Shown here: positions 7,824 through 63,806 of the stretch, piece by piece
Layout: every line of letters begins with the position of its first letter
Numbering within the stretch: the first letter of the stretch is position 1
Virus record (IMG/VR): IMGVR_UViG_3300034101_004588
Location: 62,001-126,000 of that record
Direction: 5' to 3' (one strand)
Length of the DNA stretch: 64,000 nt
Notes under the pieces: model-generated
The model's input: the letters and a program-made list of their open reading frames with translations, nothing else
Databases searched by the model: none
What the model was told of the DNA's origin: nothing
Program-made: the position numbers and the translations under genes

Positions 7824-8065
7824 TATTTTTTCTTTCTTCTTTTTTTAATTTTGTATTTTCTTTTTTTACCGGTTATTGTTTCTGGGAAATTACGGCGATA
7901 AATTCCTAAACCAAAAATATTTCTGTTATCTCCCGGAGCATATTTATCTCCACTTTTAATATCGCCAGGAGGATTATATATTGGAGTTTCTGGAATTCCT
8001 AAAGCTCCATCTCCTACAGAAGTATCTTCTAATATAGAAATTATAAATTGTTGAAATTTATTCAT
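7823..8065 (-). CDS. Small late protein with basic C-terminus, possible internal head protein
   Basis: N-terminus MNKFQQFIISILE; poly-K/R tail; TAAGTA motifs upstream (8081-8093). Confidence 0.55.
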   Translation of the reverse strand: MNKFQQFIISILEDTSVGDGALGIPETPIYNPPGDIKSGDKYAPGDNRNIFGLGIYRRNFPETITGKKRKYKIKKRRKKK

Positions 8066-8078
8066 AAATGGTTATAAT
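8051..8078 (+). promoter_or_regulatory. Sigma70-type promoter for the uvsY-uvsW-55-47-GT operon
   Basis: TTGAAA-N16-TATAAT. Confidence 0.65.
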
Positions 8079-8092
8079 CTTACTTAATACTT

Positions 8093-8494
8093 ATGGATAA
8101 AGTTTTTACAGATTATAAAAATGAAATATCTAACGATGTTAAAGTTGATGAAATTAATCTTTTACAGAAACAATTACAACTTCCCACTATTAAACATAAA
8201 TGGGCAGCCAGACAAATAGAACAAAAAAGACACCGAAATAATCTTTATAAAAAGAAAAAAGAAATTAAAGCAGCTACTTTGATAAAATTAGAAAAAGAAG
8301 GTATTCCACCTGGTATGCCTAAAAAAAGTATAACAGAAAAAATAGAATCTTCAGAAATAATGGAACAAATTAATGAAGAAATAGAACACACAGATTTGTT
8401 GATAGAATATTTAGAAAAGGTGGAAAATATTTTAAAAACTATGACCTATGATATGAAAAATATCATAGATATTAATAAACTAGAAACCACATGA
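8093..8494 (+). CDS. uvsY: Recombination mediator UvsY
   Basis: Helical 133-aa protein ending YLEKVENILKTMTYDMKNIIDINKLE, adjacent to UvsW as in T4-like phages. Confidence 0.75.
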   Translation: MDKVFTDYKNEISNDVKVDEINLLQKQLQLPTIKHKWAARQIEQKRHRNNLYKKKKEIKAATLIKLEKEGIPPGMPKKSITEKIESSEIMEQINEEIEHTDLLIEYLEKVENILKTMTYDMKNIIDINKLETT

Positions 8495-9915
8495 TAGAAA
8501 TAAATTTTAATGGAAAATCTAAAAGTTTATTACAAATAAGCGGTGATATTATAATCATTTCTTTGATTAGAGAATATTTTTCAATACCAAATCCAGCTTA
8601 TAGATCAAACACTTCTTATGTATCTTCCCGTTTATATAGTATCACACCTTCTGGAAAGTTTGAAATAGGTTTATTAGGTGAAGTAATAAAGTTTTTAACA
8701 GAAAAAAACTATTCGTTTAAAGTAAATGAAGATGTTAAAAAAGCTTATAAACCAGGCATTCTTCCAAAAAATTTAACAGAATTAAAAATAGAGTACAGAG
8801 ATTATCAAAAAAAGGCTATAGTATCTAGTATATTACAAGGAAGAGGCGTTGTGGTTTTACCTACAGCTAGTGGAAAAACCTTAGTTATGGCAGGTTTAAT
8901 AGAAACCTTAAGAGAAAATATAAACAATAAAAATGCCTTAACATTAGTTTTAGTGCCTTCTATACAATTAATAGAACAAACCTATAAAGACTTTATAGAT
9001 TATGGTTTAAAAAATGTTACAAAATGGTCTGGCAATAACAAACCAGATCCATCAGCTAATATTATTATAGCTGGAACCCAAATATTATTAAGCAAACAAA
9101 CAGATTTATCAATATTAGCAAATGTAGATATTTTTTTATGTGATGAATGCCACGGTATCCGTAAAGGAAATAATATTAATAAAATTTTTAATTATATTCC
9201 AACCTTATACAAATACGGTTTTACAGGCACAATGCCTCCTTCAAAAATAGATCAATGGAACATAATTGGTAAATTTGGTCCAGTTAACTACGAAGAAAAA
9301 ACTATTACTTTAAAAAAACAAACCTATGTATCTAATTTTCGTATAGTAATTTTAAAAATAATTCATCAAAACATGCCAAAAGTTTTTATGAATTATTCAA
9401 AACCAGCACAGGTTTATCAAGAAGAGCTAGAATTTTTAATAAATAATGAAAGGCGCAATTTAGTTATATCTAATTTAGCTTTAAAATTAGATCAAAACAC
9501 TTTAATAATGGTTGACAGAATTAATCATGGTTTAATATTAGAAAAATTACTATATAATTTAAATGATTTGAACAAATCTATTTATTTTATCAGGGGTTCT
9601 ACAGATATAGAAGAAAGAGAACAAATAAGAGAACTATTGAATAATAGTAGTTCTTCTATTATCATAGCTATATCAAAAATATTTAGTACCGGTATTAATA
9701 TTCCAAATTTACATAATATAATATTCGGATCTGCGGGTAAAGCTAAAATTAAAATAATGCAATCTATAGGTAGAGCATTAAGACTGCATCCGACTAAAAA
9801 AATAGCTACTATATTTGACATTGCAGATAATACAAAATACGGCAAAGTACATCTCCAAGAACGAAAAAAACTTTATGAAAATGAAAAATATGAATATCAA
9901 GAAAAAGAAATTTAA
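8491..9915 (+). CDS. uvsW: SF2 DNA helicase UvsW
   Basis: RDYQ, LPTASGKT, DECH, GFTGT, FSTGINIPNLHN, QSIGRALR motifs. Confidence 0.92.
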   Translation: MIEINFNGKSKSLLQISGDIIIISLIREYFSIPNPAYRSNTSYVSSRLYSITPSGKFEIGLLGEVIKFLTEKNYSFKVNEDVKKAYKPGILPKNLTELKIEYRDYQKKAIVSSILQGRGVVVLPTASGKTLVMAGLIETLRENINNKNALTLVLVPSIQLIEQTYKDFIDYGLKNVTKWSGNNKPDPSANIIIAGTQILLSKQTDLSILANVDIFLCDECHGIRKGNNINKIFNYIPTLYKYGFTGTMPPSKIDQWNIIGKFGPVNYEEKTITLKKQTYVSNFRIVILKIIHQNMPKVFMNYSKPAQVYQEELEFLINNERRNLVISNLALKLDQNTLIMVDRINHGLILEKLLYNLNDLNKSIYFIRGSTDIEEREQIRELLNNSSSSIIIAISKIFSTGINIPNLHNIIFGSAGKAKIKIMQSIGRALRLHPTKKIATIFDIADNTKYGKVHLQERKKLYENEKYEYQEKEI

Positions 9916-10552
9916 CAAAGAATTTAAAGATGAAATTGAAGAAGATCCTTTAGAGGAAATTATATATGAAGATGAGGACGACTTAGAAATAAGAGGTCCA
10001 TTAGCTTCTTTATTAGACAATGAAGAAGATATTTTAGGTGAAGAGCAAGATTCTTTAGAAGAAGAAGAAGAGGACGAAGAGGAAGTAAAAGAAGTTGTAG
10101 TTGATCTTGTTAAAATTAAAAAAGCCAGTAAAGAAAAGTATTATGTAGATCCTAAACAGTTTGATGAAGAAATAGTTAAATATTATGATTCTGGGCATAT
10201 GTCAGATGAATTGGCTTTGATGGTGAGCAAGATAGCTAATAAATTGAGCTACGCTCCCAATTTTATTAACTATACATACAGAGAAGAAATGGTTGGAGAT
10301 GGTATCATAAGAATGTTTAAAGCCTTGACTTCAAAAAAATATGACAGAGTCAAGGGAACTAATCCATTTTCTTACTTTACGCGTATAGCATTTAATGCTT
10401 TTCGTAACCGTATTAAAAGAGAAAAACATATGAGAGAGACCCATGAAAAATATCAAAGAGAGTTTATGATTATGTCTGATGGGTATAACAATTTATTAAA
10501 AAACAATCAAATAAGAATCATGAAAGAAAGAGAAAGAAAATTTCATGAATAA
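9875..10552 (+). CDS. gp55: T4 gp55-like late-transcription sigma factor
   Basis: KYYVD...IANKLSYAPNFINYTYREEMVGDG...NPFSYFTRIAFNAFRNRIKREK. Start is ATG 9875, 9881 or 9890. Confidence 0.9.
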   Translation: MKMKNMNIKKKKFNKEFKDEIEEDPLEEIIYEDEDDLEIRGPLASLLDNEEDILGEEQDSLEEEEEDEEEVKEVVVDLVKIKKASKEKYYVDPKQFDEEIVKYYDSGHMSDELALMVSKIANKLSYAPNFINYTYREEMVGDGIIRMFKALTSKKYDRVKGTNPFSYFTRIAFNAFRNRIKREKHMRETHEKYQREFMIMSDGYNNLLKNNQIRIMKERERKFHE

Positions 10553-11597
10553 AATAAACAGTGTAGAAATAGGTTGTTTTTCAGATATACACATAGGATT
10601 AGCTCAAGACAACCCATTATGGCATGATGAAATATTAAAAATAGGAAAATGGGCATCAAATTTATATAAACAACAAAATATAACTGAAATAGTTATACCC
10701 GGAGACATTTTTCATAATCGATCAGAAATTTCTGTAAAAACTCTTTCTATAGCAAAAGAATTTTTTTCTTATTTTAAAGATTTCAAAGTTTATATTTTAG
10801 TAGGCAACCACGATGCCTATTTTAAAGATCGGAGTGACGTAAATTCTGTATCTTTGTTAGATGGTTGGTCAAATATAGTAGTAGTTGATAAAACTCCTAA
10901 AATATTTGAAACCAATTTTAATAAAAAAATATCTTTAGTTCCGTGGGGAGTAGATGTAGAAAATATTCCTCAAAGTGATATATGTTTTGGTCATTTTGAA
11001 ATTAATAGTTTTTACATGAATTCTTATAAAGTTTGTGATAAAGGAGAAGATTCTCAAAATCTTTTATCAAAAAGTCCTTTTATTATATCTGGACATTTTC
11101 ATCGTAAAGAAATCAGAGAGTATTCTAATGGTCAAATATTATATGTAGGAAGTCCATACCAACAAAATTTTGGAGATGCAGGAGACGAAAGAGGAATTTA
11201 TATTTTAAATTTAAAAGACAATTCTTATAGATTTTATAAAAATAACATTTCTCCTAAACACATAAAAATTAGTATTCAAAAATTAATTGAAAAAAAGATA
11301 GATGCAAATTTTTTAAAAGAAAATGTCTCAAACAATTTAATAAGTCTCAATGTAGACACGATTATAGACCCTCAAAACATTTCTCTACTATCAAATAAAA
11401 TACAAAAATTATCTCCTAAACTTTTTCGTATAGATTATAAAGAAGGTTCTAAATCATTAATAACAACCCAAAATTTTAACATAGATTCGGTTAATATGTT
11501 GCAAAATATTGAAGATTTTGTATTATCTTTAAATATAGACCATAAACCAAATTTATTAGAATATCTAACAAATTTATACAATAAAAATTTAAAATGA
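10545..11597 (+). CDS. gp47: gp47 (Mre11/SbcD-like) recombination nuclease
   Basis: SDIHIG, GDIFHNR, GNHD, GHFE, SGHFH, YVGSPYQ metallophosphoesterase motifs. Confidence 0.9.
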   Translation: MNKINSVEIGCFSDIHIGLAQDNPLWHDEILKIGKWASNLYKQQNITEIVIPGDIFHNRSEISVKTLSIAKEFFSYFKDFKVYILVGNHDAYFKDRSDVNSVSLLDGWSNIVVVDKTPKIFETNFNKKISLVPWGVDVENIPQSDICFGHFEINSFYMNSYKVCDKGEDSQNLLSKSPFIISGHFHRKEIREYSNGQILYVGSPYQQNFGDAGDERGIYILNLKDNSYRFYKNNISPKHIKISIQKLIEKKIDANFLKENVSNNLISLNVDTIIDPQNISLLSNKIQKLSPKLFRIDYKEGSKSLITTQNFNIDSVNMLQNIEDFVLSLNIDHKPNLLEYLTNLYNKNLK

Positions 11598-12310
11598 AAA
11601 CAGAAATAGGAATAGGAATATTAGACTTATATACACCAGAAGCTTTAGAAAACTGTTTAAAATCAGTTCCAGAAGGTATATATACAACCATAGTAGGTAA
11701 AGATACTAATCAAGAAAATTTATCCGTATCTGCCCTTAAAAATTTATTAATACACGATTTTAGGAAAAAAGGTTTAAAATACTTTTTTTTGGTACATTCA
11801 AATCAAATATTTCCGGATTCAGAAATATTTGAAAGAATTGTTAGAAGAGCAGCCGTTTTTGGAACTTGGTTTTTAACAGGCCCTTCAGACAAAAATATAG
11901 AAACAGAAGACGATAAAGGTAACATTTTAAAAATTAGCACAGAATTAAACACCGAATTTTTATTTTTATTTTATGGTATTGTTAATAACAATAAATTTTT
12001 TGATGAAAGGTTTTATGCTACTAAAAATCTAGATGTTTTAGATTATATTATCAAACTAAGAAGCCTGAATCTTTATTTACCAGAAAATTATTATGCTACT
12101 ATTACAGAAAATATAAACAAAACTGTTACTTCTTTTTCTTATATTAAAGATGCTCCAGAACATATTAAAGAAAAAACAGTACAAATTTCTTATGGTTATT
12201 TTTACCACAAATACAAATACATTCCAGGTCAAAATGATCCTCAGAATAAATCTCAAGAAGAATTAACAAATCAATTAGAATATCTTCAAAAAAATTATGC
12301 AAAAACCTAA
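11594..12310 (+). CDS. Degenerate GT2-like glycosyltransferase paralogue
   Basis: IGIGILD start and overall pattern resembling the next two genes; the EDD position reads HSN. Confidence 0.5.
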   Translation: MKTEIGIGILDLYTPEALENCLKSVPEGIYTTIVGKDTNQENLSVSALKNLLIHDFRKKGLKYFFLVHSNQIFPDSEIFERIVRRAAVFGTWFLTGPSDKNIETEDDKGNILKISTELNTEFLFLFYGIVNNNKFFDERFYATKNLDVLDYIIKLRSLNLYLPENYYATITENINKTVTSFSYIKDAPEHIKEKTVQISYGYFYHKYKYIPGQNDPQNKSQEELTNQLEYLQKNYAKT

Positions 12311-18772: not shown

Positions 18773-19692
18773 TGTTATACGATTTCTTTAAAAAAGACAA
18801 ATATCTTGTAGGAGATATTGAATTCGGAGGTTTCGGGGCAATGTATGCCCGCAGAAAATTTATTTTACAATTATCTCAAGCTTTTAATCGTACACCAATT
18901 TTTAGATTTAAACATTACGTGTACGATGATCCCTTTGAATCTTTTCCAGTAGATTTAAACACTTTAAAACAAAAAAATATTAACGAAATTAAAATTTTTG
19001 ATTACACTGAAAACGAAGAGCAAGCAGTTTATTTTGATTTTAATAGTTATTGGAATTCACCAAACATGATTAAATATCAAAATCGGGCACCAAAAAATGC
19101 AGATTATTTAAAATATTCTGGATATTTATATGATCAATTAAAAATCAATCAAGAATACACAGATTTGATAGATAAAAAAATACAAGAAATAAAAGAAAAG
19201 TTTAATATTAAAAATTTTAATTCAGTTATTGGAGTACATTTGCGCCGCGGTGATAAAATAGTAGAAATACCATATCTTTCAGAAAAAACTGTTTTCGATT
19301 TAGTAGATAAATTAAAAACAGAAGACAATATTAAAGATTGTGCTATTTTTATAACTAGTGATGAATTACAATACATAGAAGAAATTATTGAGAAATATCC
19401 TCAATATAATTTTATATACGATAAAGAAGAACCCAGATATGGTTCACAACACATGTCAAATCTTCAATTAGTTGCTTCTCATCCTTTTTTAAAAAAACAA
19501 GAAACCTTAACCTTTATGAAAAATGTAGAAATTCTAAAACAATGCGCTTATGTTATAGGACCTCATGGAGCGCAAATGAGTAAAATTGCCGGCGCTATTA
19601 ATTCATATCATAACAATTCTAAAAAATTATTTTTAATCAATTCAGAAACAGATAAACTAGAAGAAATGGGAGCCACCACTGCTTCTTGTTGA
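18772..19692 (+). CDS. Alpha-1,6-fucosyltransferase-like (GT23/NodZ/FUT8-type) glycosyltransferase
   Basis: GGFGA, IGVHLRRGDK, IFITSDE motifs. Confidence 0.75.
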   Translation: MLYDFFKKDKYLVGDIEFGGFGAMYARRKFILQLSQAFNRTPIFRFKHYVYDDPFESFPVDLNTLKQKNINEIKIFDYTENEEQAVYFDFNSYWNSPNMIKYQNRAPKNADYLKYSGYLYDQLKINQEYTDLIDKKIQEIKEKFNIKNFNSVIGVHLRRGDKIVEIPYLSEKTVFDLVDKLKTEDNIKDCAIFITSDELQYIEEIIEKYPQYNFIYDKEEPRYGSQHMSNLQLVASHPFLKKQETLTFMKNVEILKQCAYVIGPHGAQMSKIAGAINSYHNNSKKLFLINSETDKLEEMGATTASC

Positions 19693-19716
19693 AGTTATTT
19701 TAAATAAAACTATAAT
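19689..19716 (+). promoter_or_regulatory. Sigma70-type promoter for gp46
   Basis: TTGAAG-N16-TATAAT, 8 nt before the GTG. Confidence 0.65.
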
Positions 19717-19724
19717 AAATTAAG

Positions 19725-21515
19725 GTGAGAAGAATAGTATTTAATAAAATACATATACAAAATTTTCTATCAATAGGTGAAGTCCCGGTTATTATAAATT
19801 TTAATAAAGGTATTTCATTAATAACAGGGAATAATAAAGATAAAGATAGTAAAAATGGTTGTGGAAAGACAGCTATATTAGATGCGTTTTATTGGAGCTT
19901 GTTCGGAGAAACCATCAGAGATCTTAAAAAAGAAAAAATAATTCACAATCAAACTTCTAAAAATTGTTTAGTAGTTTTAGATTTTGAAATTATATCTAAT
20001 AATGAAATTAATAGATATAAAATATCTAGAACCTTAAATCCTAATACAGTCAGTATTTTTCAAGATGATCAAGACATTACTTTATCTTCCATACCCAAAA
20101 ATGACGAATTTATAAAAGAATTAATAGGAGCTAATGAAGAGGTTTTTAAAAATGTTATTTTGATGTCTTTAGACAATACATTACCTTTCATGGCACAAAA
20201 AAAGGTAGATAAAAGAAAGTTTGTAGAAGGAATATTACAGCTTAATATTTTTAGTGATATGCTTTTAGAAATAAGAGCAGATTACAATGAAACTAAAAAA
20301 GAATACGAAATAATATCTTCAAAATTTTTAGAAAAACAAAAATATTATCAAATACAAGAAAATCAACAAAACAAACAAGAGGAAATTAAAAACAATAAAA
20401 TAACAGAATTAAAAAATAAAATAATAAACAATAATAACCATATCAAAAATTTAGAAAAATCAAACATTTCTTTGGAAGACATTCAAAATAAAATACTTAC
20501 AACTGAAAAAAGTATAGAAAAATTAGAAAAAGAGAAAGAAAATGTTAATAAAAAAATATCTAACCAAATTAATTTACAGACTAATACACAACAGCTTATT
20601 AAAGAATTACAATCTCAAAAACAACAATTTTTAAATAAAAATGGTATTTGTCCTACATGCAAACAAAAAATGTCAGAGTTATCTGAACATGAAATAAACG
20701 AACATTCTAAAATTATTAGTGATAAAATAGAAATTAGTAAAAAAGAACTCAACTCGATCGAAGAAAATAAAAACAAAGAACAAAATTTAGAAAATAAAAT
20801 TTCTGAAAAAATAAAAGAATTTAAGAACTCTTTAAAAAATTATTACACAGAATCAACTAACATTTCCAACAGAGACAAAGAAATTTTATCTTTACAAGAA
20901 AGAAATGAGGAATACTTAAAAAATATAAAAGAACTAGAGAATCAACAAGATGAATATACAGAAATTTTGAATAATCTTAAAATAGAAATAAATGAAACAG
21001 AAAATTTTCTTAAGGAACTTCAAAAAAAATTACAGATACTAGAAACTGCTAAATTTGTGGTTTCTGAAGAAGGGGTTAAAACTTCTATTATACATAAAAT
21101 GTTAGCACTGTTAAACCAAAAATTTAATTTGTATCTCCAATGGTTAGAAGCCCCATGTCAAGGAATTTTTAGCGAAACCTTTGAAGAAACCTTAATAAAT
21201 GAACACAAAAAAGAATGTTCTTATTTTAATTTTAGTAGTGGAGAAAGAAAAAGAATAGATTTAGCCATACTTTTTATGTTTCAAGATTTATTAAAAGATC
21301 AAAACGGGGTATGTTATTCTGTGAATATGTATGATGAATTATTTGATTCAGCGTTAGACGAAAACGGAATTAATAAAGTATTAGAAATATTAAAATCTAA
21401 AGAGGATTGCAGTGTTTACATTATTTCTCACAATAAAAATACACAGAAAATAGAGTTTGATAATGTTATAAATTTAGAAAAAAAAGACGGTAAAACAAGC
21501 CTTTTACTTGAATAA
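19725..21515 (+). CDS. gp46: gp46 (Rad50/SbcC-like) ATPase
   Basis: NFLSIG, NGCGKT Walker A, CPTC zinc hook, FSSGERKRIDLA signature, DELFD, ISH. Confidence 0.93.
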   Translation: MRRIVFNKIHIQNFLSIGEVPVIINFNKGISLITGNNKDKDSKNGCGKTAILDAFYWSLFGETIRDLKKEKIIHNQTSKNCLVVLDFEIISNNEINRYKISRTLNPNTVSIFQDDQDITLSSIPKNDEFIKELIGANEEVFKNVILMSLDNTLPFMAQKKVDKRKFVEGILQLNIFSDMLLEIRADYNETKKEYEIISSKFLEKQKYYQIQENQQNKQEEIKNNKITELKNKIINNNNHIKNLEKSNISLEDIQNKILTTEKSIEKLEKEKENVNKKISNQINLQTNTQQLIKELQSQKQQFLNKNGICPTCKQKMSELSEHEINEHSKIISDKIEISKKELNSIEENKNKEQNLENKISEKIKEFKNSLKNYYTESTNISNRDKEILSLQERNEEYLKNIKELENQQDEYTEILNNLKIEINETENFLKELQKKLQILETAKFVVSEEGVKTSIIHKMLALLNQKFNLYLQWLEAPCQGIFSETFEETLINEHKKECSYFNFSSGERKRIDLAILFMFQDLLKDQNGVCYSVNMYDELFDSALDENGINKVLEILKSKEDCSVYIISHNKNTQKIEFDNVINLEKKDGKTSLLLE

Positions 21516-21544
21516 TTTAACAATTCAGTTAAATTTAACATAAT

Positions 21545-22297: not shown

Positions 22298-22300
22298 AAT

Positions 22301-23608
22301 ATGGCAATAAAAATTAAAAACTCTAACAATCAACCTAATCAAGCAGTTTTTCAGTATAGTCAAGTTTCTACAGGTTTACCAATGGCTCCAATGGGGATGC
22401 CTTCTAATTTACCTATTCATTATTCCTACGTTACATCTAAACCAGTATATATACCACCCCCACCACCTATAGAAATGGCTGAAGCTCATCTGCCTAGAGT
22501 CTTGAATTATTTTGCAGATTATGGTGGTTGTGGGCATTGGAGAATGATCTGGCCTGAATTTTTATTAAATTTCGGACAAAAGTTAGTTTCTTCCGGAATG
22601 ACGCAGATGATTTTAGATATTAGATTTTATTCAACTTTAAAAGCTGTAAGATTTCAAAGACAGGCAACACCTCATCAAAATGCTTTTATTAAAGAATTAC
22701 AAAAAATCAGACAGCAAACCAAATTGCGTTTAATCTATGAAATAGATGATATTGTTTTTAAAGATGATATTCCAGATTACAACAGATGTAAAGATGCATT
22801 TGTAGATCAAACTATTGTAGATAGTATTTTAGAAATAATGTCAGCAATGGATGAAATAACAGTTACCTGTGATTACATGAAACAATACTATATTAATAAA
22901 ACAGGTAACAAAAATATTACAAAAATACCCAATTATGCACCAAAATTTTGGTTAGACAGATATTATGATCAAGAAAAAATACAAAAGAATTTTGAAAAAA
23001 ATAAAAAGAGACCAAGAATATTATATGCCGGATCTGGTACTCATGTTGATGTATTAAATAGAACAGGTTTTAATGATGATTTCCATCATGTAGTTGATTC
23101 CATTATTAAAGCTCGTAAAAAGTTTAAATTTGTATGGAAAGGGTGTTATCCATTAGCAGTTAAACAATTTATAGAAAATGGAGAAATGGAGTATTTAGAT
23201 TGGTCGCCTTTACCCAGCTATCCTCAAGGTTTAGTTGATGCTAATTGTAATGTTACCTTTGCTTCATTAACTGATAACGTGTTTAACAGATCAAAAAGCA
23301 ATATCAAAATGATAGAAGCAGGAGCATTGGGTTTACCAGGAGCTTATCAAGATATGTGTACTTATGAAGAGGCTCCTGTAAGATTTAAAAGCGGAGATGA
23401 TTTAATAGATCAATTAGAATACATTACTTCGGATGTTTCTCGTTATATGAGATTATCAAAACAAGCCAGAGAGTTTACAGAGAAATTATGGTTAGAAGAT
23501 CATTTAGATGAATATCTAGCCATGTATTTAACTCCGTGGGGATCAAAAGAAAGAAAAGAAATGAGTCCTCTTTTAATTGATAATAACCCCGACCAGAATA
23601 TAAATTGA
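22301..23608 (+). CDS. GT-B fold glycosyltransferase
   Basis: GGCGHWR, YEIDD, YAGSGTH, FNRSKSNIKMIEAGALGLP. Confidence 0.8.
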   Translation: MAIKIKNSNNQPNQAVFQYSQVSTGLPMAPMGMPSNLPIHYSYVTSKPVYIPPPPPIEMAEAHLPRVLNYFADYGGCGHWRMIWPEFLLNFGQKLVSSGMTQMILDIRFYSTLKAVRFQRQATPHQNAFIKELQKIRQQTKLRLIYEIDDIVFKDDIPDYNRCKDAFVDQTIVDSILEIMSAMDEITVTCDYMKQYYINKTGNKNITKIPNYAPKFWLDRYYDQEKIQKNFEKNKKRPRILYAGSGTHVDVLNRTGFNDDFHHVVDSIIKARKKFKFVWKGCYPLAVKQFIENGEMEYLDWSPLPSYPQGLVDANCNVTFASLTDNVFNRSKSNIKMIEAGALGLPGAYQDMCTYEEAPVRFKSGDDLIDQLEYITSDVSRYMRLSKQAREFTEKLWLEDHLDEYLAMYLTPWGSKERKEMSPLLIDNNPDQNIN

Positions 23609-23632
23609 TTAATTTATTTAAAATCGTATAAT
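23605..23632 (+). promoter_or_regulatory. Sigma70-type promoter for the DNA polymerase (leaderless geometry)
   Basis: TTGATT-N16-TATAAT, 7 nt before the ATG. Confidence 0.65.
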
Positions 23633-23639
23633 ATAAAAC

Positions 23640-26201
23640 ATGGCTTGGCGTAATGTTTTTTATGATAATCGTAGTCAGTCGATTCATTTATGGACATGGG
23701 ACGAGAATGGTAATCGCCAGAAATTGATCTCGTCTTATGAACCTAACATTTATATAGAATCTAATAATGGTGAAGATGGTGTATCTATTTTTAATACACC
23801 TTTAAAAAAGATAACTTTTAAAAATCAATTTGAAAGAAATAAATTTGTTAATGAGACACCAATTAAACGTTTGTTTAATAATTTGTCTTGTGAGCAAGAT
23901 TTCTTATTAAGCACTTTTAAAGATGAAGTAAATAAAGACAATTTTGGTAAATATCCTTTAAAAATATATTTTTTAGATATTGAAACCTATAGTCCAAATG
24001 CATTTCCAGTACCAGAAAAAGCAGAAGATCCTATAAATCTTATAACTTTATATGACACTTTATCAAAAAAATATTACACTTGGGGCACAAAAAAATATCA
24101 AAATCAATCAGAAGATGTAGTTTATTTTTATTGTAAAAGTGAAACTACTTTATTAGAAAACTTTTTAAATTTTTTTGAAAAAGATCATCCAGATATTTTA
24201 AGCTCTTGGAATGGTGAAGGATTTGATATACCTTACATAATAAATCGTATTAAAAACATATTAGGCGATGAAGAAAGTAATAGACTGTCTCCAGTACAAA
24301 ACATTTTTTACAGAGAAAATGTAGCTTTAAATAAATTCGGCAAGGTTATTAATAGATATTATATAAGAGGTTTAAGTTGTGTTGACTACATGGAATTGTA
24401 CAAAACCTTTTCTAGAGGAGATAGAGAATCCTATTCTTTAGGATATATAGGACAGTATGAATTGGGAGAGAGTAAAATAGATTATGGAACAATGTCTTTA
24501 CATGAATTAGCAGATAAAGATTGGCAAAAATTTGTAGATTATAACATACAAGACGTAAAATTATTAGTAAAATTAGAAAGTAAATTAAAATTTTTAAAAT
24601 TGATCAGAACTTTATCTTATAAAGGATTTATACCATTTGAACAGTCTTTAGGTAAAGTTTCCATGATTACAGGAGCTGTTGCCCATCAGGCATATAAACA
24701 AGGATATATTATTCCAACATTTAAAAATGATATTGTCAGAGAAGCTTATGAGGGCGGTTATGTGCATGAACCAGAAAGAGGTTTAAGTAAAGCTGTAGTT
24801 GGATATGATGCAAACAGTCTATATCCAAACACTATAATTTCATTAAATCTTTCTCCGGAAACCAAAATAGGTAAAATAGTAAAAATAGAAAACGACGAAT
24901 ATTTTATTAAACTTAATAATGAAAAATTAATATCTTTGCATAAAGAAAAATTTCAGAAACTAGTAGAAAAAGAAAAATTATCAATTTCAAAAGCAAATGT
25001 GTTGTATACTCAAAAATTTAAAGGAGTAATACCCAATTTGATTGATAGGTTATATCAAGAAAGAGTAGAAACCCGTAAAGAGATGTTAGCAAAAGAAAGA
25101 GAATATAAGAAGACCAAAGACATCTCAATTAAAGCTCAAATTGAAAGTTTAGATACACTACAAAACGTATTTAAGTTGACTTTAAATTCTATATATGGTG
25201 TATTTGCACAAAAATTTTCACCATTGTTTGATATTGACCATTCTGCAAGTATTACATTAACAGGCCAAGCAGTTGTTAAACAAGCCTCTGAAATTGTCTA
25301 TCAACAAGCAATTTCTCAGAATGTAAACTGTACTAAAGAAGACATTTACAAATATGGAGACACAGATAGTTGTTATTTTTCTGTATTACCGATATTAAAC
25401 CATTTTAATTTAAATTTATTAAGTGACAATGAAATTAATAAAGATGCTTATAGTCTTATAGAAAAATTAGGAGAACATTTAAACGAAAAAATTACAGAAT
25501 GGGCAAAAAAAGAATTGCATTCAACAGATCCTCGATTTGTTTTTAAAAGAGAATCTATATGTGATGTAGCTTTGTTCATGGAGAAAAAAAGATATATTCT
25601 TCATGTTTTAGACAAAGAAGGAGTTGCAACTAATAAATTTAAATATGTTGGTGTGGAAATAGCTCGTTCTACTATGTCAGAATCAGTCAAAAAAATTATT
25701 AAAAAGATTATAGAATCTGCAATGTTATACAATGACAGAAAAAAATCTAATAATTTATTGCAAGAAGGATATGAAGAATTTAAAAAACTAAGCATAGAAG
25801 ACTTAGCGTTTAGATGTAAAATATCTGATTATGAAAAATACGAATCAAAAATAAAAGAAGATGGAACTTTAGGCAAAGGAACACCTATTCATATTAAAAG
25901 TGCAATTCTTTTTAATAAAATGTTAAAAAAACTTAATATAGACACAGTTTATATGTCTATAGGAAGTGGAACTAAAATTAAATACTTTTATGCAGCTAAA
26001 AATTTATATAATTATAAATCAATGGCTTTTTTAGATGTTTATCCCAAAGAACTTGAAGAAATTATAAAAATTGATTATAAAATGATGTTTAGTAAATTAG
26101 TAGAACCACCTATAAAAAGGCTTTATGAAAGTATAGGATGGCCTCCACCGACAATTGAATCAGAAACTCAAACAGATTTATTTGATTTGTTTGCAATTTA
26201 G
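23640..26201 (+). CDS. gp43: Family B DNA polymerase (gp43-like)
   Basis: DIET, WNGEGFDIPY, YNIQD exonuclease motifs; DANSLYP, KLTLNSIYG, YGDTDS, KKRY polymerase motifs. Confidence 0.97.
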   Translation: MAWRNVFYDNRSQSIHLWTWDENGNRQKLISSYEPNIYIESNNGEDGVSIFNTPLKKITFKNQFERNKFVNETPIKRLFNNLSCEQDFLLSTFKDEVNKDNFGKYPLKIYFLDIETYSPNAFPVPEKAEDPINLITLYDTLSKKYYTWGTKKYQNQSEDVVYFYCKSETTLLENFLNFFEKDHPDILSSWNGEGFDIPYIINRIKNILGDEESNRLSPVQNIFYRENVALNKFGKVINRYYIRGLSCVDYMELYKTFSRGDRESYSLGYIGQYELGESKIDYGTMSLHELADKDWQKFVDYNIQDVKLLVKLESKLKFLKLIRTLSYKGFIPFEQSLGKVSMITGAVAHQAYKQGYIIPTFKNDIVREAYEGGYVHEPERGLSKAVVGYDANSLYPNTIISLNLSPETKIGKIVKIENDEYFIKLNNEKLISLHKEKFQKLVEKEKLSISKANVLYTQKFKGVIPNLIDRLYQERVETRKEMLAKEREYKKTKDISIKAQIESLDTLQNVFKLTLNSIYGVFAQKFSPLFDIDHSASITLTGQAVVKQASEIVYQQAISQNVNCTKEDIYKYGDTDSCYFSVLPILNHFNLNLLSDNEINKDAYSLIEKLGEHLNEKITEWAKKELHSTDPRFVFKRESICDVALFMEKKRYILHVLDKEGVATNKFKYVGVEIARSTMSESVKKIIKKIIESAMLYNDRKKSNNLLQEGYEEFKKLSIEDLAFRCKISDYEKYESKIKEDGTLGKGTPIHIKSAILFNKMLKKLNIDTVYMSIGSGTKIKYFYAAKNLYNYKSMAFLDVYPKELEEIIKIDYKMMFSKLVEPPIKRLYESIGWPPPTIESETQTDLFDLFAI

Positions 26202-26215
26202 AATATATTTTTAAT

Positions 26216-27076: not shown

Positions 27077-27711
27077 TATCCATAACCAAACCAGAAATAG
27101 AAGGAATAAATTCTGCAGAAGATTTAATAACCTATTGTGCCAGAGTTAGTAATCCAGATAATCAATTAAATGTTTCTACTAGTTCAAACTTGTTAAAGTA
27201 TCTTATAAAGCATAAACATTGGAGCCCGTTTGAAATGGTTTCAATGTGCGTAAAAATAAAAACCAGCAGAGCTATAGCAGCTCAAATATTACGCCATAGA
27301 AGTTTTAGCTTTCAAGAATTCAGCCAACGATATTCAACAGCAACTGAATTAGAAGAATTACATTTTAGAAAACAAGGTAAAACCAACCGTCAAGTAGGAG
27401 ATGAAGAATTTCCATTAACACAACATTGGGATACTCTTGTACATATTAAAGAAGCTCAAAGAAAGTGTTTAGAAGTTTATAATGAACTTATTAAATGTGG
27501 AGTTGCAAGAGAATGTGCTCGTATGGTTCTTCCTTTAAATACAAGTACAACATTATATATGTCGGGTACTATAAGATCATGGATACATTATTTAGATCTT
27601 AGAACCTCAAAAGACACTCAAAAAGAACATCAAATAATAGCCAATGATATTAAAAAAATTTTTATAGAAAAATTTCCAGCAATTTCTGAGGCTTTGTATG
27701 TTGACAAATAA
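27061..27711 (+). CDS. thyX: Flavin-dependent thymidylate synthase
   Basis: HWSPFE, QILRHRSFSFQEFSQRY, ARMVLP, TQKEH. Confidence 0.96.
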   Translation: MSVELISITKPEIEGINSAEDLITYCARVSNPDNQLNVSTSSNLLKYLIKHKHWSPFEMVSMCVKIKTSRAIAAQILRHRSFSFQEFSQRYSTATELEELHFRKQGKTNRQVGDEEFPLTQHWDTLVHIKEAQRKCLEVYNELIKCGVARECARMVLPLNTSTTLYMSGTIRSWIHYLDLRTSKDTQKEHQIIANDIKKIFIEKFPAISEALYVDK

Positions 27712-27728
27712 CTCTTATTGTATATAAT
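27701..27728 (+). promoter_or_regulatory. Consensus sigma70-type promoter (leaderless geometry)
   Basis: TTGACA-N16-TATAAT, 7 nt before ATG 27736. Confidence 0.75.
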
Positions 27729-27735
27729 ATAAAAT

Positions 27736-28146: not shown

Positions 28147-28149
28147 TTT

Positions 28150-29686: not shown

Positions 29687-29689
29687 ATT

Positions 29690-29717
29690 TTGATTTTTAT
29701 AAAATTTTTGCTATAAT
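29690..29717 (+). promoter_or_regulatory. Sigma70-type promoter for the helicase (extended -10)
   Basis: TTGATT-N16-TATAAT with TGn, 6 nt before the GTG. Confidence 0.65.
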
Positions 29718-29723
29718 ATAGTA

Positions 29724-31106: not shown

Positions 31107-31129
31107 CCCTTTATGATTAAATATAAGAT

Positions 31130-33838: not shown

Positions 33839-33842
33839 TTTT

Positions 33843-34685: not shown

Positions 34686-34686
34686 T

Positions 34687-35130: not shown

Positions 35131-35878
35131 CAACCTAAAGTTATCTAAAAATCTTTTAGAAAACTTTTTACGCCCTATTAACAGGTTGACTGAAAGTTGC
35201 GTTTTAAAATTAGATAAAACTCGAATTTACAGTGTTTGTTCTTCATCAGACAACACAGTAATATTATATGTCAATTGTGGTTTAAAAGAAGAAGTAAAAG
35301 ATCAATTAAGGTTTAACATAATTAATATTAAAAAATTTTTATCCGGTTTAGAATGTTTAGAAACTTCAGAAAACGGCGATATAAACATACAATACCATCA
35401 GAATTATATAAAATGTGAATCCTCAGGAAATCAAAATAAAACGTTTTTTAAATATTATCTAGTTGATGATAGTATTGTTAAAGAAGCACCAGTTAATTTG
35501 GAAAAAATAGCAAAATTAAAATTTGATACAGAATTTACTATAAATTTAGAAAATATTAAAAAAATAATGTCTGGATATGCATTTGCAACAGATGTATCTA
35601 AGATATATTTTTATTCAGACAATAGCTCCGTTTATGCTGAGATAAATGATCAAACATTACAAAATGTAGATAATATAACATTAAAAATATCAAATTCTTT
35701 TGAAGGAGAACCTATCAACAATCCTCTTCCAGTAAATATAGAAATCTTTAAAAATTTAACACTTACTAAAAACGGAATTAAGGTTAAAATTAACAATCAA
35801 TATAAAGTTTTAATATTTCAAAATTTAAACAACGAAAATATAGAAGCTAAATACATAGTTTCTGCCCTTGTTAAATGA
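35123..35878 (+). CDS. gp45: DNA polymerase sliding clamp (gp45-like)
   Basis: About 250 aa two-domain alpha/beta pattern (FNIINIKKFL...; KYYLVD; C-terminal KYIVSALV) in the replication block. Confidence 0.65.
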   Translation: MDNNLKLSKNLLENFLRPINRLTESCVLKLDKTRIYSVCSSSDNTVILYVNCGLKEEVKDQLRFNIINIKKFLSGLECLETSENGDINIQYHQNYIKCESSGNQNKTFFKYYLVDDSIVKEAPVNLEKIAKLKFDTEFTINLENIKKIMSGYAFATDVSKIYFYSDNSSVYAEINDQTLQNVDNITLKISNSFEGEPINNPLPVNIEIFKNLTLTKNGIKVKINNQYKVLIFQNLNNENIEAKYIVSALVK

Positions 35879-35905
35879 ATTTAAAAGGATAAAATATATA
35901 AATAT

Positions 35906-36226: not shown

Positions 36227-36238
36227 ACATAAGTATGT

Positions 36239-36631: not shown

Positions 36632-36636
36632 TAAAT

Positions 36637-52001: not shown

Positions 52002-52032
52002 AATAATATTTATGGTAAGAAGTAAGTTTGAA

Positions 52033-54566: not shown

Positions 54567-54594
54567 AACAATACTTATTATGGCTGCGATTAAA

Positions 54595-55146: not shown

Positions 55147-55152
55147 TATTTA
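55147..55152 (-). promoter_or_regulatory. Late promoter core for the tail tube gene
   Basis: GGATAAATA on the minus strand, 9 nt before the ATG. Confidence 0.65.
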
Positions 55153-55155
55153 TCC

Positions 55156-57717: not shown

Positions 57718-57723
57718 TATTTA
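57718..57723 (-). promoter_or_regulatory. Late promoter core for the sheath gene
   Basis: GGATAAATA on the minus strand, 15 nt before the ATG. Confidence 0.65.
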
Positions 57724-57789
57724 TCCTTTTCAAGACCAGGATTGAAAAAATATTTTAAATAATGTTCAAAAGAGTAAATATATAATAAT

Positions 57790-60862: not shown

Positions 60863-60864
60863 AA

Positions 60865-61185: not shown

Positions 61186-61200
61186 ATATTATATTTAGGC

Positions 61201-61232
61201 AAAAAAAAACTCCGCTTGCGGCGGAGTTTTTT
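61201..61232. terminator. Intrinsic terminator, potentially bidirectional
   Basis: A9-CTCCGC-ttgcg-GCGGAG-T6; on the minus strand the stem is followed by 9 U, just after the 61250 gene. Confidence 0.85.
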
Positions 61233-62038: not shown

Positions 62039-62081
62039 AATGTTTTGTATCTTGATATATTTATCCAATTAATGCCCACTT

Positions 62082-62885
62082 TCAATAATTTTTATTTAAA
62101 AGCTCTTCAGCTTCTCTTTTAACATTAAGGGTTTCTAACATCTGAAAATCGTTTTTATCTCCTATCCATACAATATGAGTATTATCAACGTCAAAACCTG
62201 TATTTTTTTCTATTATCAAACGGTATATCCAAAGTTGTAGGCTATATTTAATATGATCACAATAAGGCAAATGAGATATAGGTTCTAAGAAATGCTCGTC
62301 TCTGGGATTATTTTTTAAAATGGATTTATTAGTCTTATAATCAAAAATTTCTAACTTTTTGGTTTTTCTGTTCAATGACAAATTATCTATCGTGCCGCAT
62401 ATTAAATTTTTTGGATCTCCAACAACAAATTCGGATTTAATTAAAAAATAATTTTTCTTATACCATTTATAAAAATTTAAAAAGTTTTTAATAAGATGAG
62501 CTACTTCAGTATAATATTGACTGGTCAAATCTAAACTATTATTATTTTTTAAAAAGGTTTGTAAAGCTTCTTTATCTAAAACGTTTTGTTTTCTTTCTAT
62601 ATAATTTTCTGCAAAAAGGTGAAACTCTGAACCTTTATGAGAAGAATAATCTCGCTTAAAATCCCATAAAGCTAATACTTCATCAACTCTTAATCCATCC
62701 CTTTCAGAAATTATTCCAGCCATTTTTTCTCGAGGAAATTCTGGTGAATGATTTTTTAATAAACCGGTAACTGAACATTTAGCGTCTTTATTACCTATTT
62801 TGTAGGTATGATTTTTACTATAAAAAATTACGTCTTTAAAAGACTCTTCCAAAGTTATTAAATCTTCTACATTAAAACTTGACAT
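62082..62885 (-). CDS. PD-(D/E)XK exonuclease
   Basis: HTY, SVT, KGSEFH, SEF, CGTIDNL, IFDYKTN, YSLQLWIY. Confidence 0.85.
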   Translation of the reverse strand: MSSFNVEDLITLEESFKDVIFYSKNHTYKIGNKDAKCSVTGLLKNHSPEFPREKMAGIISERDGLRVDEVLALWDFKRDYSSHKGSEFHLFAENYIERKQNVLDKEALQTFLKNNNSLDLTSQYYTEVAHLIKNFLNFYKWYKKNYFLIKSEFVVGDPKNLICGTIDNLSLNRKTKKLEIFDYKTNKSILKNNPRDEHFLEPISHLPYCDHIKYSLQLWIYRLIIEKNTGFDVDNTHIVWIGDKNDFQMLETLNVKREAEELLNKNY

Positions 62886-63484
62886 TAAAGATATCTTACT
62901 ACAAAATTTTGTAGTTTTCCAGTAAATTGATGAATTTTATATACGAATTTGTAAATTATATTGCGCCTAATATAACGAACAATTTTAGTGTTTAAAAAAT
63001 ATTTGTTATACCAAAGCTTTGACTGCTCTTCGTATTTTTTAAAAATTTCTTGAGTTCTATGGTAATGTTCTGTAGTATCTTCTATACTTTGGTCGATCAA
63101 TTCCATAGAAGACAATTTACCATCTATAAATTTAGCTTCGTAATCTAAATTAATTGTAGTTTCTTTAACATTATTTTTTTCATCTTTTGAATGTATTACT
63201 TCATAGAAATAAAAAACTATTTTACCATGAAAGTTTTCGTTAATATTTTCTGAGCTGGTTTCTTTTAAATACCCTTTAAGAAACATTTCATCATTATCTT
63301 CCCATTCATACGTACATTTTTTTCTTAATAGATCTCCATCTTCTGTAATGGTATAAACTTTCATCAAATTTTCTAAAGATTTGGTTTGGAGTTCCAATTC
63401 ATAGACATCAAAGACTCCTAAGTCTAAAATGTCTTTGGTCACTGGCAACGGGTGGTTGCAAATTATATTATCAAACATTCCCAT
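62885..63484 (-). CDS. Hypothetical phage protein (MGMFD / QTK family)
   Basis: MGMFDNI...LP, QTKSL, FHG, AKFIDGKL. Confidence 0.65.
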   Translation of the reverse strand: MGMFDNIICNHPLPVTKDILDLGVFDVYELELQTKSLENLMKVYTITEDGDLLRKKCTYEWEDNDEMFLKGYLKETSSENINENFHGKIVFYFYEVIHSKDEKNNVKETTINLDYEAKFIDGKLSSMELIDQSIEDTTEHYHRTQEIFKKYEEQSKLWYNKYFLNTKIVRYIRRNIIYKFVYKIHQFTGKLQNFVVRYL

Positions 63485-63755
63485 ATTTTAAAGCTTCCTC
63501 TATAAGATTTACAATGATATCATTCACAGTTTTATTTTTTTCTAAAGACTCTTCAACTAAAAATTCAAAAATTTGTTTAGGCCATGAAGACGTATCTAGA
63601 TCAATGGTTACCCAAGGTTTAATAACAATATTTTTATTTTCATCAACATCTATTGATAATTTTTGTTGAGGTTTCCAACCCAGTTCTTGTATTTCTTCTT
63701 CTGAAAATTCTATATACAATTCTTTTTTTTCTTTAACTGTTTTGTATTTTTGCAT
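63471..63755 (-). CDS. AbrB/MazE-like DNA-binding protein
   Basis: YIEFSEEEIQELGWKPQQKLSI AbrB pattern; TTGATA-N16-TATCTT promoter at 63762-63789. Confidence 0.55.
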   Translation of the reverse strand: MQKYKTVKEKKELYIEFSEEEIQELGWKPQQKLSIDVDENKNIVIKPWVTIDLDTSSWPKQIFEFLVEESLEKNKTVNDIIVNLIEEALKYGNV

Positions 63756-63806
63756 TTTTTAAAGATAAATTGTTTTTTTAACTTATCAACAGTTTTTTAA
63801 ATGTTT

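What the first reader, a model, noticed from the sequence alone, without database searches (positions are those of the whole stretch)
8051..63789. Sigma70-type promoters with a uniform 16-bp spacer and leaderless geometry
Seen: nine TTGnnn-N16-TAnnnT elements, with -35 at 8051, 19689, 21508, 23605, 26182, 27701, 29690, 35868 and 63789 (minus). The gaps from -10 to the start codon are 14, 8, 9, 7, 6, 7, 6, 10 and 6 nt. No convincing Shine-Dalgarno sequences were seen; other genes are coupled by overlapping stop/start codons. Known: the canonical spacer is 17 bp and +1 lies about 7 nt after -10. Inference: the polymerase, dpdA, helicase and other genes are translated from leaderless mRNAs. The 16-bp preference may fingerprint the host RNAP, a phage-modified holoenzyme, or altered helical geometry of modified DNA.
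Basis: partly seen in the sequence, partly recalled or inferred. Interest (0 to 1): 0.6.

Follow-up and report, generated by a model that had tools for sequence, protein, structure and literature searches.

The report
Phage promoters butted against start codons
An uncultured freshwater T4-like phage places its promoters 6-8 bases in front of its start codons, so the first gene of most transcription units is probably read from an mRNA with no leader and no ribosome-binding site; this is known from Thermus phages and some bacteria but not from T4-like phages.

Summary
All nine sites exist with the stated spacers and gaps. The loose pattern is at chance level in the window (103 matches, 105 expected), but its placement before start codons is not. 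Genome-wide, TTGnnn-N16-TAnnnT lying 5-9 nt before a start occurs 16 times against 0.9 expected, and N17 10 times against 0.9; other spacers are at background. A complete relative repeats this (15 and 9). Orthologous promoters in 41 related contigs keep the layout: N16 in 36, N17 in 15, most often 6 nt to an ATG or GTG. So "uniform 16 bp" holds only inside the window. The clade uses 16 more than 17, both within the normal sigma-70 range.

Leaderless geometry is well supported but has no RNA evidence. Site 35868 is probably of this late type. Site 8051 has a conserved short leader. Shine-Dalgarno use is at background, except at the capsid gene (AGGAGG). The preference for 16 is not linked to the 7-deazaguanine genes. 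The host is unknown.

The parts
8051..8078 (+). Sigma-70-type promoter before uvsY (start 8093). -35 TTGAAA at 8051-8056, 16-bp spacer, -10 TATAAT at 8073-8078, gap 14 nt. Predicted short leader of about 7-8 nt, so not leaderless. It overlaps the start of the divergent gene 7823-8065.
   Evidence: UvsY Pfam. N16 is kept in 5 relatives; the gap is 11-12 nt in four of them, with ACTT directly before the ATG in most.
19689..19716 (+). Promoter before the gp46/Rad50-like gene (GTG start 19725). TTGAAG-N16-TATAAT, gap 8. The TGA stop of the upstream gene lies inside the -35 element (TTGA).
   Evidence: 12 unique relatives keep N16 here, with ATG or GTG at the same place.
21508..21535 (+). Promoter-like site before the QueE-like radical SAM gene (ATG 21545). 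TTGAAT-N16-TAAATT, gap 9. This is the weakest -10 of the set.
   Evidence: Its conservation in relatives is unclear (6 of 7 without a clean match).
23605..23632 (+). Promoter before family B DNA polymerase (ATG 23640). TTGATT-N16-TATAAT, gap 7. The TGA stop of the upstream glycosyltransferase gene lies inside the -35 element.
   Evidence: the position is conserved in relatives (N16 in 8, N17 in 8), mostly with a 6-nt gap to the ATG.
26182..26209 (+). Promoter before a 286-aa DpdA-like protein (ATG 26216). TTGATT-N16-TATATT, gap 6. The -35 element lies inside the last codons of the polymerase gene.
   Evidence: weak tgt hit, E 0.003. N16 in 5 relatives.
27701..27728 (+). Perfect consensus promoter, TTGACA-N16-TATAAT (12 of 12), before a 136-aa ORF (ATG 27736), gap 7.
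   Evidence: TTGACA is conserved in relatives, with N16 or N17 and gaps of 7-9.
29690..29717 (+). Promoter before the DnaB-like (gp41-type) helicase (GTG 29724). TTGATT-N16-TATAAT with TG at -15/-14, gap 6.
   Evidence: relatives have N16 (3) or N17 (7), a 6-nt gap and GTG or ATG. Nine others have no clean match; several of these show the helicase start lying right at the upstream stop.
35868..35904 (+). It is more likely a T4-type late promoter: ATAAAATA at 35889-35896 and TATAAATA at 35897-35904, before ATG 35906.
   Evidence: the TTG sits in conserved codons (L-V-K-stop) of the upstream gene, and relatives carry ATAAATA 5-12 nt before the ATG.
63762..63789 (-). Promoter on the minus strand before a 94-aa ORF (ATG at 63755). 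TTGATA-N16-TATCTT, gap 6.
   Evidence: The ortholog in G002 is too diverged to compare.
9877..10552 (+). gp55-like late sigma factor gene. The exact start is uncertain. It overlaps the end of the UvsW-like helicase gene and has an acidic N-terminal extension.
   Evidence: (Sigma70_r2, E 8e-5), (phrog_234 late sigma, E 4e-27).
4067..4073 (+). Late-type box ATAAATA, 5 nt before ATG 4079.
31117..31123 (+). Late-type box TTAAATA, 6 nt before ATG 31130 (DHH phosphoesterase-like gene).
52007..52013 (-). Late-type box ATAAATA, 5 nt before the ATG of the 937-aa structural-region gene 49188-52001.
54572..54578 (-). Late-type variant ATAAGTA, 5 nt before the ATG of gene 53844-54566.
55147..55153 (-). 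Late-type box ATAAATA, 9 nt before the tail tube gene (54595-55137).
57718..57724 (-). Late-type box ATAAATA, 15 nt before the tail sheath gene (55156-57702). Predicted short leader.
61192..61226 (-). Compact unit on the minus strand: terminator hairpin (stem 61226-61210, T-run 61209-61201), then late box CTAAATA (61198-61192), then 6 nt and ATG 61185. There is no room for a leader.
   Evidence: Read directly from the sequence.

Best explanation
The window is the replication and structural core of a distant T4-like myovirus: a 211-kb, 31% GC, about 99% complete record found in lake-water metagenomes.

Seven of the nine sites are genuine promoters of the sigma-70 (-35/-10) type: 19689, 21508 (weakest), 23605, 26182, 27701, 29690 and 63789. 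They are presumably read by the host primary-sigma holoenzyme. Each fills the short gap between two genes. The -10 hexamer ends 6-9 nt before an ATG or GTG, so the purine of the start codon (or a base 1-2 nt upstream of it) is the predicted transcription start.

The first gene of each unit would then be translated from a leaderless mRNA, by direct 70S/fMet-tRNA binding to a 5'-terminal AUG or GUG, with no Shine-Dalgarno help. Downstream genes would be translated by coupling across overlapping or abutting stop and start codons.

The same design is used by a second class: gp55-type late promoters (ATAAATA) 5-7 nt before the starts of late genes.

N16 goes with a TTGA -35 element. N17 goes with more varied TTGN -35 elements.

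Shown: the sequence geometry, its statistics, its conservation, and the presence of the late sigma gene. Inferred: promoter activity, the exact +1, and the mode of translation.
For: Position-specific enrichment:
- N16 gives 16 sites against 0.9 expected, N17 gives 10 against 0.9, and all other spacers are at background.
- TTG alone peaks 31-33 nt before starts, and TAnnnT peaks at 6 nt.

Replication in the complete relative G002 (PolB 64% identical): N16 15, N17 9, N15 and N18 one each, late box 21 against 2.7 expected.

Conservation at orthologous promoters of the gp46, polymerase, DpdA-like, orf136 and helicase genes in 41 loci:
- The hexamers and the distance to the start are kept while the spacer sequence changes.
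- N16 occurs 36 times and N17 15 times; the gap is 6 nt in 26 cases.
- The start codon is ATG or GTG at the same place.

Other points:
- A gap of 6-8 nt puts the start-codon purine at positions 7-9 after the -10 element, the usual start-site range of bacterial RNA polymerase (established knowledge). It matches the '6- to 8-nt distance' of leaderless genes in GeneMarkS-2 group C genomes (PMC6028130).
- There is no Shine-Dalgarno enrichment before 299 ORFs or in relatives. T4, Melnitz and HTVC008M show AGGA before 33-37% of genes.
- Promoters fill the intergenic gaps of 14-37 nt, with the -35 element overlapping the upstream stop codon.
- Precedent: in Thermus phages YS40 and Lalka most transcripts start at the A or G of the initiator codon.
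- Late class: TAAATA 5-7 nt before starts, 30 against 2.5 expected; gp55-like sigma gene.
Against: - No RNA data exist for this phage. All 13 runs that hold it are DNA. No transcription start, promoter activity or N-terminus has been observed.
- Gene starts come from a simple ORF caller, although the tblastn alignments to relatives mostly begin at residue 1.
- In AT-rich DNA the -10 register is ambiguous: TATAATAT can be read as N16 with gap 7 or N18 with gap 5.
- Gaps of 8-10 nt (sites 19689, 21508, 35868) and 14 nt (site 8051) allow leaders of 1-8 nt.
- Units are packed head to tail with few terminators (8 found, 6 expected). Much expression may come from read-through, with these sites acting only as internal boosters.
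- The capsid gene uses a 62-nt leader with AGGAGG, so SD-led initiation is available in the host.
- Counts across relatives are not phylogenetically independent.
Confidence: 0.72

Rival explanations
1. The promoters are real, but they are internal boosters inside long polycistronic transcripts. Most protein would be made from read-through mRNA by termination-reinitiation across the 14-37-nt gaps, so leaderless translation would contribute little.
For: - Genes are co-directional and tightly packed; 159 of 251 neighbour pairs overlap or lie less than 10 nt apart.
- Terminator-like hairpins are at chance level in 18500-38000 (8 against 6).
- In several relatives the helicase gene has no promoter and is simply coupled to the upstream gene.
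Against: - The distance from the -10 element to the start codon is held at 6-8 nt across relatives. Nothing would constrain this if the only job were to add transcripts.
- The late class shows the same fixed distance.
Confidence: 0.15
2. The TTGA-N16 sites are a separate, phage-controlled 'middle' promoter class for DNA-metabolism genes, read by a holoenzyme altered by an unknown phage factor. The N17 sites with varied -35 elements would be the true early, host-type promoters.
For: - The two spacings go with different -35 elements. The fourth base is A in 94% (this genome) and 84% (relatives) of N16 sites, against 30% and 44% of N17 sites (Fisher p 0.001 and 0.0003).
- In this genome N16 sites cluster in the replication module. 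N17 sites cluster in the 143-199-kb region of small ORFs.
Against: - At the orthologous polymerase and helicase promoters, relatives switch freely between N16 and N17.
- No AsiA, MotA or second sigma factor was found.
- Both spacings lie within the normal 17 +/- 1 range of a single sigma-70 holoenzyme.
Confidence: 0.2
3. The 16-bp preference reflects altered helical geometry of 7-deazaguanine-modified phage DNA.
For: The genome carries QueE-, QueD-, FolE2- and DpdA-like genes.
Against: - The complete relative G002 has none of these genes (tblastn E<=1) yet shows N16:N17 = 15:9.
- Related loci without the genes show 36:12; those with them show 15:14.
- N16 spacers average only 17% G+C, and the only G invariant in all sites is the one in TTG.
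Confidence: 0.04
4. The sites are not promoters. They are AT-rich sequence before start codons (chance, or an SD-independent translation enhancer).
For: The bare pattern is at chance level in the window, and consensus scans give background numbers. A strong match (11 of 12) lies inside the helicase gene at 29785 with no start codon after it.
Against: - A TTG placed exactly 19-20 nt before TAnnnT has no role in translation, yet only N16 and N17 are enriched, about 10- to 18-fold.
- Both hexamers are conserved across relatives while the spacer is not.
Confidence: 0.04

Closest known systems
Leaderless transcription units of Thermus phages phiYS40 and Lalka27a
   Same: These are lytic phages in which most transcripts begin at the A or G of the initiator codon, with a -10-type element a fixed few bases upstream and several temporal promoter classes (bioRxiv 10.64898/2026.04.20.719267).
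   Different: Their host phylum (Deinococcus-Thermus) is itself rich in leaderless genes. Those phages are not T4-like, and their late promoters have other motifs. Here the phage is T4-like with 31% GC, the promoters carry a strong -35 element, and the late class is gp55-type. The Thermus cases are measured; this one is only inferred.
[quoted passage not shown]
   Same: TAnnnT lies 6-8 nt before the start codon of the first gene of an operon, with no SD sequence (PMC6028130; PMC3160421; PMC12340547).
   Different: Those promoters usually lack a clear -35 element, and internal genes there use SD. Here -35 TTGA is near-invariant and internal genes lack SD. The phage encodes bS21, a ribosomal protein that those phyla lack (my own knowledge, not tested here).
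Phage T4 early, middle and late promoter scheme
   Same: The core gene set is shared: UvsY, UvsW, gp55, gp47, gp46, gp43, UvsX, gp41, gp32, sheath, tube and terminase. The phage has sigma-70-type promoters plus an A/T-rich late box of the TATAAATA kind read by a gp55 homologue (PMC2988020).
   Different: In T4 the late box lies 9-39 nt before starts, and 36% of genes have AGGA upstream. T4 middle promoters need MotA and AsiA and a TGCTT box 12 +/- 1 bp from the -10 element. Neither protein nor that spacing is found here.
Pelagibacter myophage HTVC008M
   Same: It has the same order of the uvsY, uvsW, gp55, gp47 and gp46 genes and also encodes bS21. At 10 or more late genes the box ATAAATAG sits 4 nt before the ATG (TAAATA at gap 5), which is leaderless-type late geometry.
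   Different: HTVC008M uses SD widely (AGGA before 37% of genes) and shows no sigma-70 promoters abutting starts. PolB is only about 30% identical to the window's over cyanophage, Methylophilales-phage and Caulobacter-phage records; no HTVC008M row was listed.

Membership tests
Sigma-70-type (-35/-10) bacterial promoter | A -35 hexamer resembling TTGACA | tested here: met
   TTG is invariant by construction. The fourth base is A in 15 of 16 N16 sites. Site 27701 is TTGACA.
Sigma-70-type (-35/-10) bacterial promoter | A -10 hexamer TAnnnT resembling TATAAT | tested here: met
   N16 sites match TATAAT at a mean of 5.06 of 6 positions. Five of the nine sites are exactly TATAAT.
Sigma-70-type (-35/-10) bacterial promoter | Spacer of 17 +/- 1 bp | tested here: met
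   Only N16 and N17 are enriched before starts; N15 and N18 are at background.
Sigma-70-type (-35/-10) bacterial promoter | Placed upstream of genes in the sense orientation and conserved among relatives | tested here: met
Sigma-70-type (-35/-10) bacterial promoter | Transcription starts about 7 nt after the -10 element and depends on the primary sigma holoenzyme | not testable with these tools
   No RNA run holds the sequence, and the host is unknown.
Leaderless mRNA | The 5' end of the primary transcript coincides with the start codon | not testable with these tools
   Only geometry is available. The gap is 6-8 nt in 20 of 26 genome sites and most often 6 nt in relatives.
Leaderless mRNA | No Shine-Dalgarno sequence, and no room for one | tested here: met
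   SD-like words are at background. The promoter occupies the whole intergenic gap.
Leaderless mRNA | AUG (or GUG) as the first codon at the predicted +1 | tested here: met
   21 ATG and 5 GTG in this genome. ATG and GTG interchange at the same position in relatives. GUG-initiated leaderless transcripts are reported in Thermus phages.
T4 middle (MotA/AsiA-dependent) promoter | MotA box (TGCTT) 12 +/- 1 bp upstream of the -10 element, and motA and asiA genes in the phage | tested here: not met
   There is no AsiA or MotA_activ hit at E<=1. TTGCTT occurs in some relatives, but at 16-17 bp from the -10 element, not about 14 (the T4 spacing is from my own knowledge).
Bacteroidota sigma-A promoter | A -7 element TAnnTTTG | tested here: not met
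   TAnnTTTG shows no positional peak before starts. The motif definition comes from PMC6847099 and PMC9723704.
T4-type late promoter (applies to site 35868 and the second class) | An A/T box of the TATAAATA kind at the -10 position with no -35 element, and a gp55 homologue encoded by the phage | tested here: met
   TAAATA lies 5-7 nt before starts 30 times against 2.5 expected. The gp55-like gene hits phrog_234 at E 4e-27. The T4 box spans -13 to -6 (PMC2988020). gp33 and gp45 homologues were not identified.

The most novel reading that the evidence does not exclude
This freshwater T4-like clade has made leaderless initiation its default for the first gene of almost every unit, under both host-sigma and gp55 promoters. 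It keeps SD for very few genes, such as the capsid gene. This could be a takeover strategy: the phage would bias ribosomes towards 5'-terminal AUG or GUG and away from SD-led host mRNAs, perhaps through its own bS21 or an unknown factor. The promoter would then double as the translation signal.
Probability: 0.15. Interest if true: 0.75.

Novelty: new member of a known kind. Interest (0 to 1): 0.5.

Why it matters
If 5'-end mapping confirms the layout, it would be the first T4-like phage group in which both sigma-70-type and gp55-type promoters deliver leaderless mRNAs.

Practical uses:
- It gives a rule for calling gene starts and operons in such metagenomic phages: -10 box, then 6-8 nt, then ATG or GTG.
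- It is a candidate signal for host prediction.
- It gives a compact promoter and start module to test.

It also shows that spacer length here is an ordinary 16/17 mix and not a mark of DNA modification.

Tried and rejected
- **RNA evidence.** The one sequencing-run search found 13 lake-water DNA runs and no RNA run. Read laying was therefore not used, since DNA contigs cannot show a start site.
- **Near-identical phages.** Megablast against cultured phages found nothing. The best PolB hits are about 30% identical.
- **Host.**
  - A genome-contig scan with PolB found nothing.
  - A scan with FolE2 gave one 85% hit, in a 'Melainabacteria' MAG. That MAG holds at least 6 different T4-like PolB contigs, so it is a phage-laden bin and not a host clue.
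  - The phage bS21 has only viral relatives. The word search sees only proteins of similar length, so this blank says little.
  - No WhiB was found.
- **Bacteroidota-type promoters.** Rejected.
- **T4 middle-promoter machinery (AsiA, MotA).** Absent.
- **Extra sigma region 4 or IF3.** Absent.
- **RegB-like avoidance of GGAG.** Rejected. GGAG is not depleted on sense strands (observed/expected 1.78).
- **Spacer G+C as the cause of 16 versus 17.** The trend is not significant (p about 0.1).
- **Rfam.** No known RNA element in the window.
- **TGT Pfam model.** It does not detect the DpdA-like gene, and PDB sequence search is uninformative. Only a weak NCBIfam tgt hit supports the 'dpdA' label.

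Full report
**What the window is.** The window is bases 62001-126000 of a single 210,956-bp IMG/VR virus record. The record is about 99% complete and has 31% GC. Its DNA is found only in lake-water metagenomes. The gene content is that of a distant T4-like myovirus:
- UvsY at 8093-8494
- a UvsW-like helicase at 8491-9915
- a gp55-like late sigma gene at about 9877-10552
- a gp47-like phosphoesterase at 10545-11597
- a gp46/Rad50-like protein at 19725-21515
- PolB at 23640-26201
- ThyX at 27061-27711
- UvsX at 28150-29277
- a DnaB-like helicase at 29724-31106
- a gp32-like SSB at 32987-33838
- on the minus strand, large terminase, tail tube and tail sheath.

PolB is only about 30% identical to that of any cultured phage. 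IMG/VR holds 41 related loci with 52-66% PolB identity.

**Checking the observation.** All nine sites exist with the stated spacers and gaps. The pattern by itself is worthless in such AT-rich DNA. The window has 103 matches against 105 expected. A stricter consensus scan gives 119 against 116.

Position is what matters. I called 299 ORFs genome-wide and asked how often TTGnnn-Nx-TAnnnT ends 5-9 nt before a start. N16 gives 16 sites and N17 gives 10. Shuffled upstream regions give about 0.9 for each. N13-15 and N18-20 give 1-4, which is background. TTG alone peaks 31-33 nt before starts.

The genome uses both 16 and 17.

**Conservation.** Upstream of the polymerase gene, relatives keep a TTG-type hexamer, a TAnnnT hexamer and, most often, exactly 6 nt to the ATG. 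The spacer sequence is free to change. Across the orthologous gp46, polymerase, DpdA-like, orf136 and helicase promoters I count N16 in 36 cases, N17 in 15 and other spacers in at most 3 each. The gap is 6 nt in 26 cases, and ATG and GTG alternate at the same position. All unique sites in the 41 loci give 62 N16 against 28 N17.

An independent complete relative, G002 (202,880 bp with terminal repeats), repeats the whole picture. It has 15 N16 and 9 N17 sites, with N15 and N18 at background. These counts are not phylogenetically independent, so the 16-over-17 preference is a clade tendency, not a measured optimum.

**Why the geometry means leaderless.** With the -10 hexamer at -12 to -7, a 6-nt gap makes the first base of the start codon +1. 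Gaps of 7-8 nt still put that purine within the normal start-site window (established knowledge). GeneMarkS-2 finds the same '6- to 8-nt distance' for leaderless genes in Mycobacterium (PMC6028130). Other groups describe the same layout in Actinobacteria and Deinococcus-Thermus (PMC3160421; PMC12340547).

The promoters fill intergenic gaps of 14-37 nt, and the -35 element often overlaps the upstream stop codon. SD-like words before starts are at background, for example GGAG at 3.3% against 3.1%. T4, Melnitz and HTVC008M have AGGA before 33-37% of genes. Thermus phages YS40 and Lalka give an experimental precedent, including 5'-terminal G of GUG codons.

No RNA run holds this phage. The transcription starts are therefore inferred, not observed.

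Late genes carry ATAAATA (variant ATAAGTA) just before their start codons. TAAATA ends 5-7 nt before a start 30 times against 2.5 expected, with the mode at 6 nt. G002 gives 21 against 2.7. The phage encodes a gp55-like late sigma factor. In T4 the late box spans -13 to -6 (PMC2988020). A 5-6-nt gap therefore again puts +1 on, or one base before, the ATG.

In T4 itself the box lies 9-39 nt upstream of starts. S-PM2 shows no such adjacency. HTVC008M does show it at 10 or more late genes, as ATAAATAG followed by 4 nt and the ATG.

**Corrections to individual sites.**
- Site 35868 is best read as a late promoter. Its TTG lies in conserved C-terminal codons of the upstream gene, and relatives have ATAAATA there.
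- Site 8051 (uvsY) keeps N16 in five relatives, but with an 11-12-nt gap in four of them and ACTT directly before the ATG in most. That is a short leader.
- Site 21508 has the weakest -10 element and unclear conservation.

**Exceptions.** The major capsid gene lies outside the window. It has a 62-nt leader with a hairpin and AGGAGG 8 nt before its ATG. G002 has a hairpin and AAGGA at the same gene. SD-led initiation is therefore available in the host and is used sparingly.

**What causes the 16-bp preference?**
- *Modified DNA.* This is disfavoured. G002 lacks QueE, the DpdA-like gene, QueD and FolE2, yet has the same ratio. Loci without these genes show 36:12 against 15:14 for loci with them.
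- *A T4-style modified holoenzyme.* This has no support. There is no AsiA or MotA, and the spacing is wrong for a MotA box.
- *Two sub-classes.* N16 sites have a TTGA -35 element in 84-94% of cases, N17 sites in only 30-44%. In this genome the two spacings also sit in different regions. Orthologous promoters nevertheless switch between them, so one holoenzyme reading both is the simpler view.
- *Host polymerase preference.* This remains open because the host is unknown.

**Host.** The promoters are not of the Bacteroidota TAnnTTTG type (PMC6847099 and PMC9723704). The phage encodes bS21 but no WhiB. The only bacterial-genome hit is a contig in a bin full of T4-like phage fragments. I leave the host unassigned.

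**Verdict.** It is weaker in another: the spacer is a 16/17 mix, one site is misclassified and one is leadered. The layout is a known kind of arrangement in a phage group where it has not been described. I found no paper linking T4-like phages with leaderless promoters. One paper reports that late-promoter prediction failed in pelagimyophages (PMC7029224).

Noticed in passing
window 11594-19692: About nine co-directional, mostly overlapping ORFs of 208-306 aa lie between the gp47-like and gp46-like genes. Several hit different glycosyltransferase families (GT2, GT25, GT47/exostosin, nucleotide-sugar transferase, fucosyltransferase-like). T4-like relatives have one or two small ORFs at this position.
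   Followed up: partly
window 21545-22297, 26216-27076, 29249-29686, 33726-34685: 7-deazaguanine pathway genes (QueE-like, DpdA-like with only a weak tgt hit, QueD-like, FolE2) are scattered through the replication module. The complete relative G002 lacks all four.
   Followed up: partly
genome 14917-16442 (outside the window; locus L152): The major capsid gene is the clear exception to the leaderless design. It has a 62-nt leader with a 9-bp hairpin and AGGAGG 8 nt before the ATG.
   Followed up: partly
genome 134185-134382, minus strand (L043:1453-1650): A phage-encoded ribosomal protein bS21 (65 aa). Its nearest Atlas clusters are almost all viral. HTVC008M and Melnitz also encode bS21.
   Followed up: partly
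genome about 148-186 kb (outside the window): A sub-class of N17 promoters has a C-rich block just after the -35 element and a TACACT -10 element (for example TTGAACTTCCCCC...TACACT, then 8 nt, then ATG). They sit before small ORFs in the tRNA-rich region and may be the earliest promoter class.
   Followed up: no
L044-L046 (Pelagibacter phage HTVC008M): At least 10 late genes have ATAAATAG followed by 4 nt and the ATG, which is leaderless-type late geometry. A published survey reported that late-promoter prediction failed in pelagimyophages.
   Followed up: partly
L048 and G001 (GTDB MAG labelled Candidatus Melainabacteria, contig CALBDR010000186.1): This 3.3-Mb bin contains at least six different T4-like PolB genes on small contigs, and a FolE2 85% identical to the window's. 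The bin appears to be loaded with phage fragments.
   Followed up: partly
window 8051-8092: The 27-nt gap between the divergent genes 7823-8065 and uvsY holds overlapping signals. The start codon of the minus-strand gene lies inside the spacer of the uvsY promoter. The conserved ACTT run before the uvsY ATG is the reverse complement of part of an AAGTA late-type variant box.
   Followed up: no
window 9877-10100: The gp55-like sigma factor has a roughly 100-residue, highly acidic (E/D-rich) N-terminal extension that T4 gp55 lacks. Its gene overlaps the end of the helicase gene.
   Followed up: no
window 29785-29812: A near-perfect TTGATA-N16-TATAAT lies inside the helicase gene with no start codon downstream. 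It shows that even 11-of-12 matches occur by chance here.
   Followed up: yes
genome 139-186 kb: There are 19 tRNA genes, all on the minus strand and none in the window.
   Followed up: no
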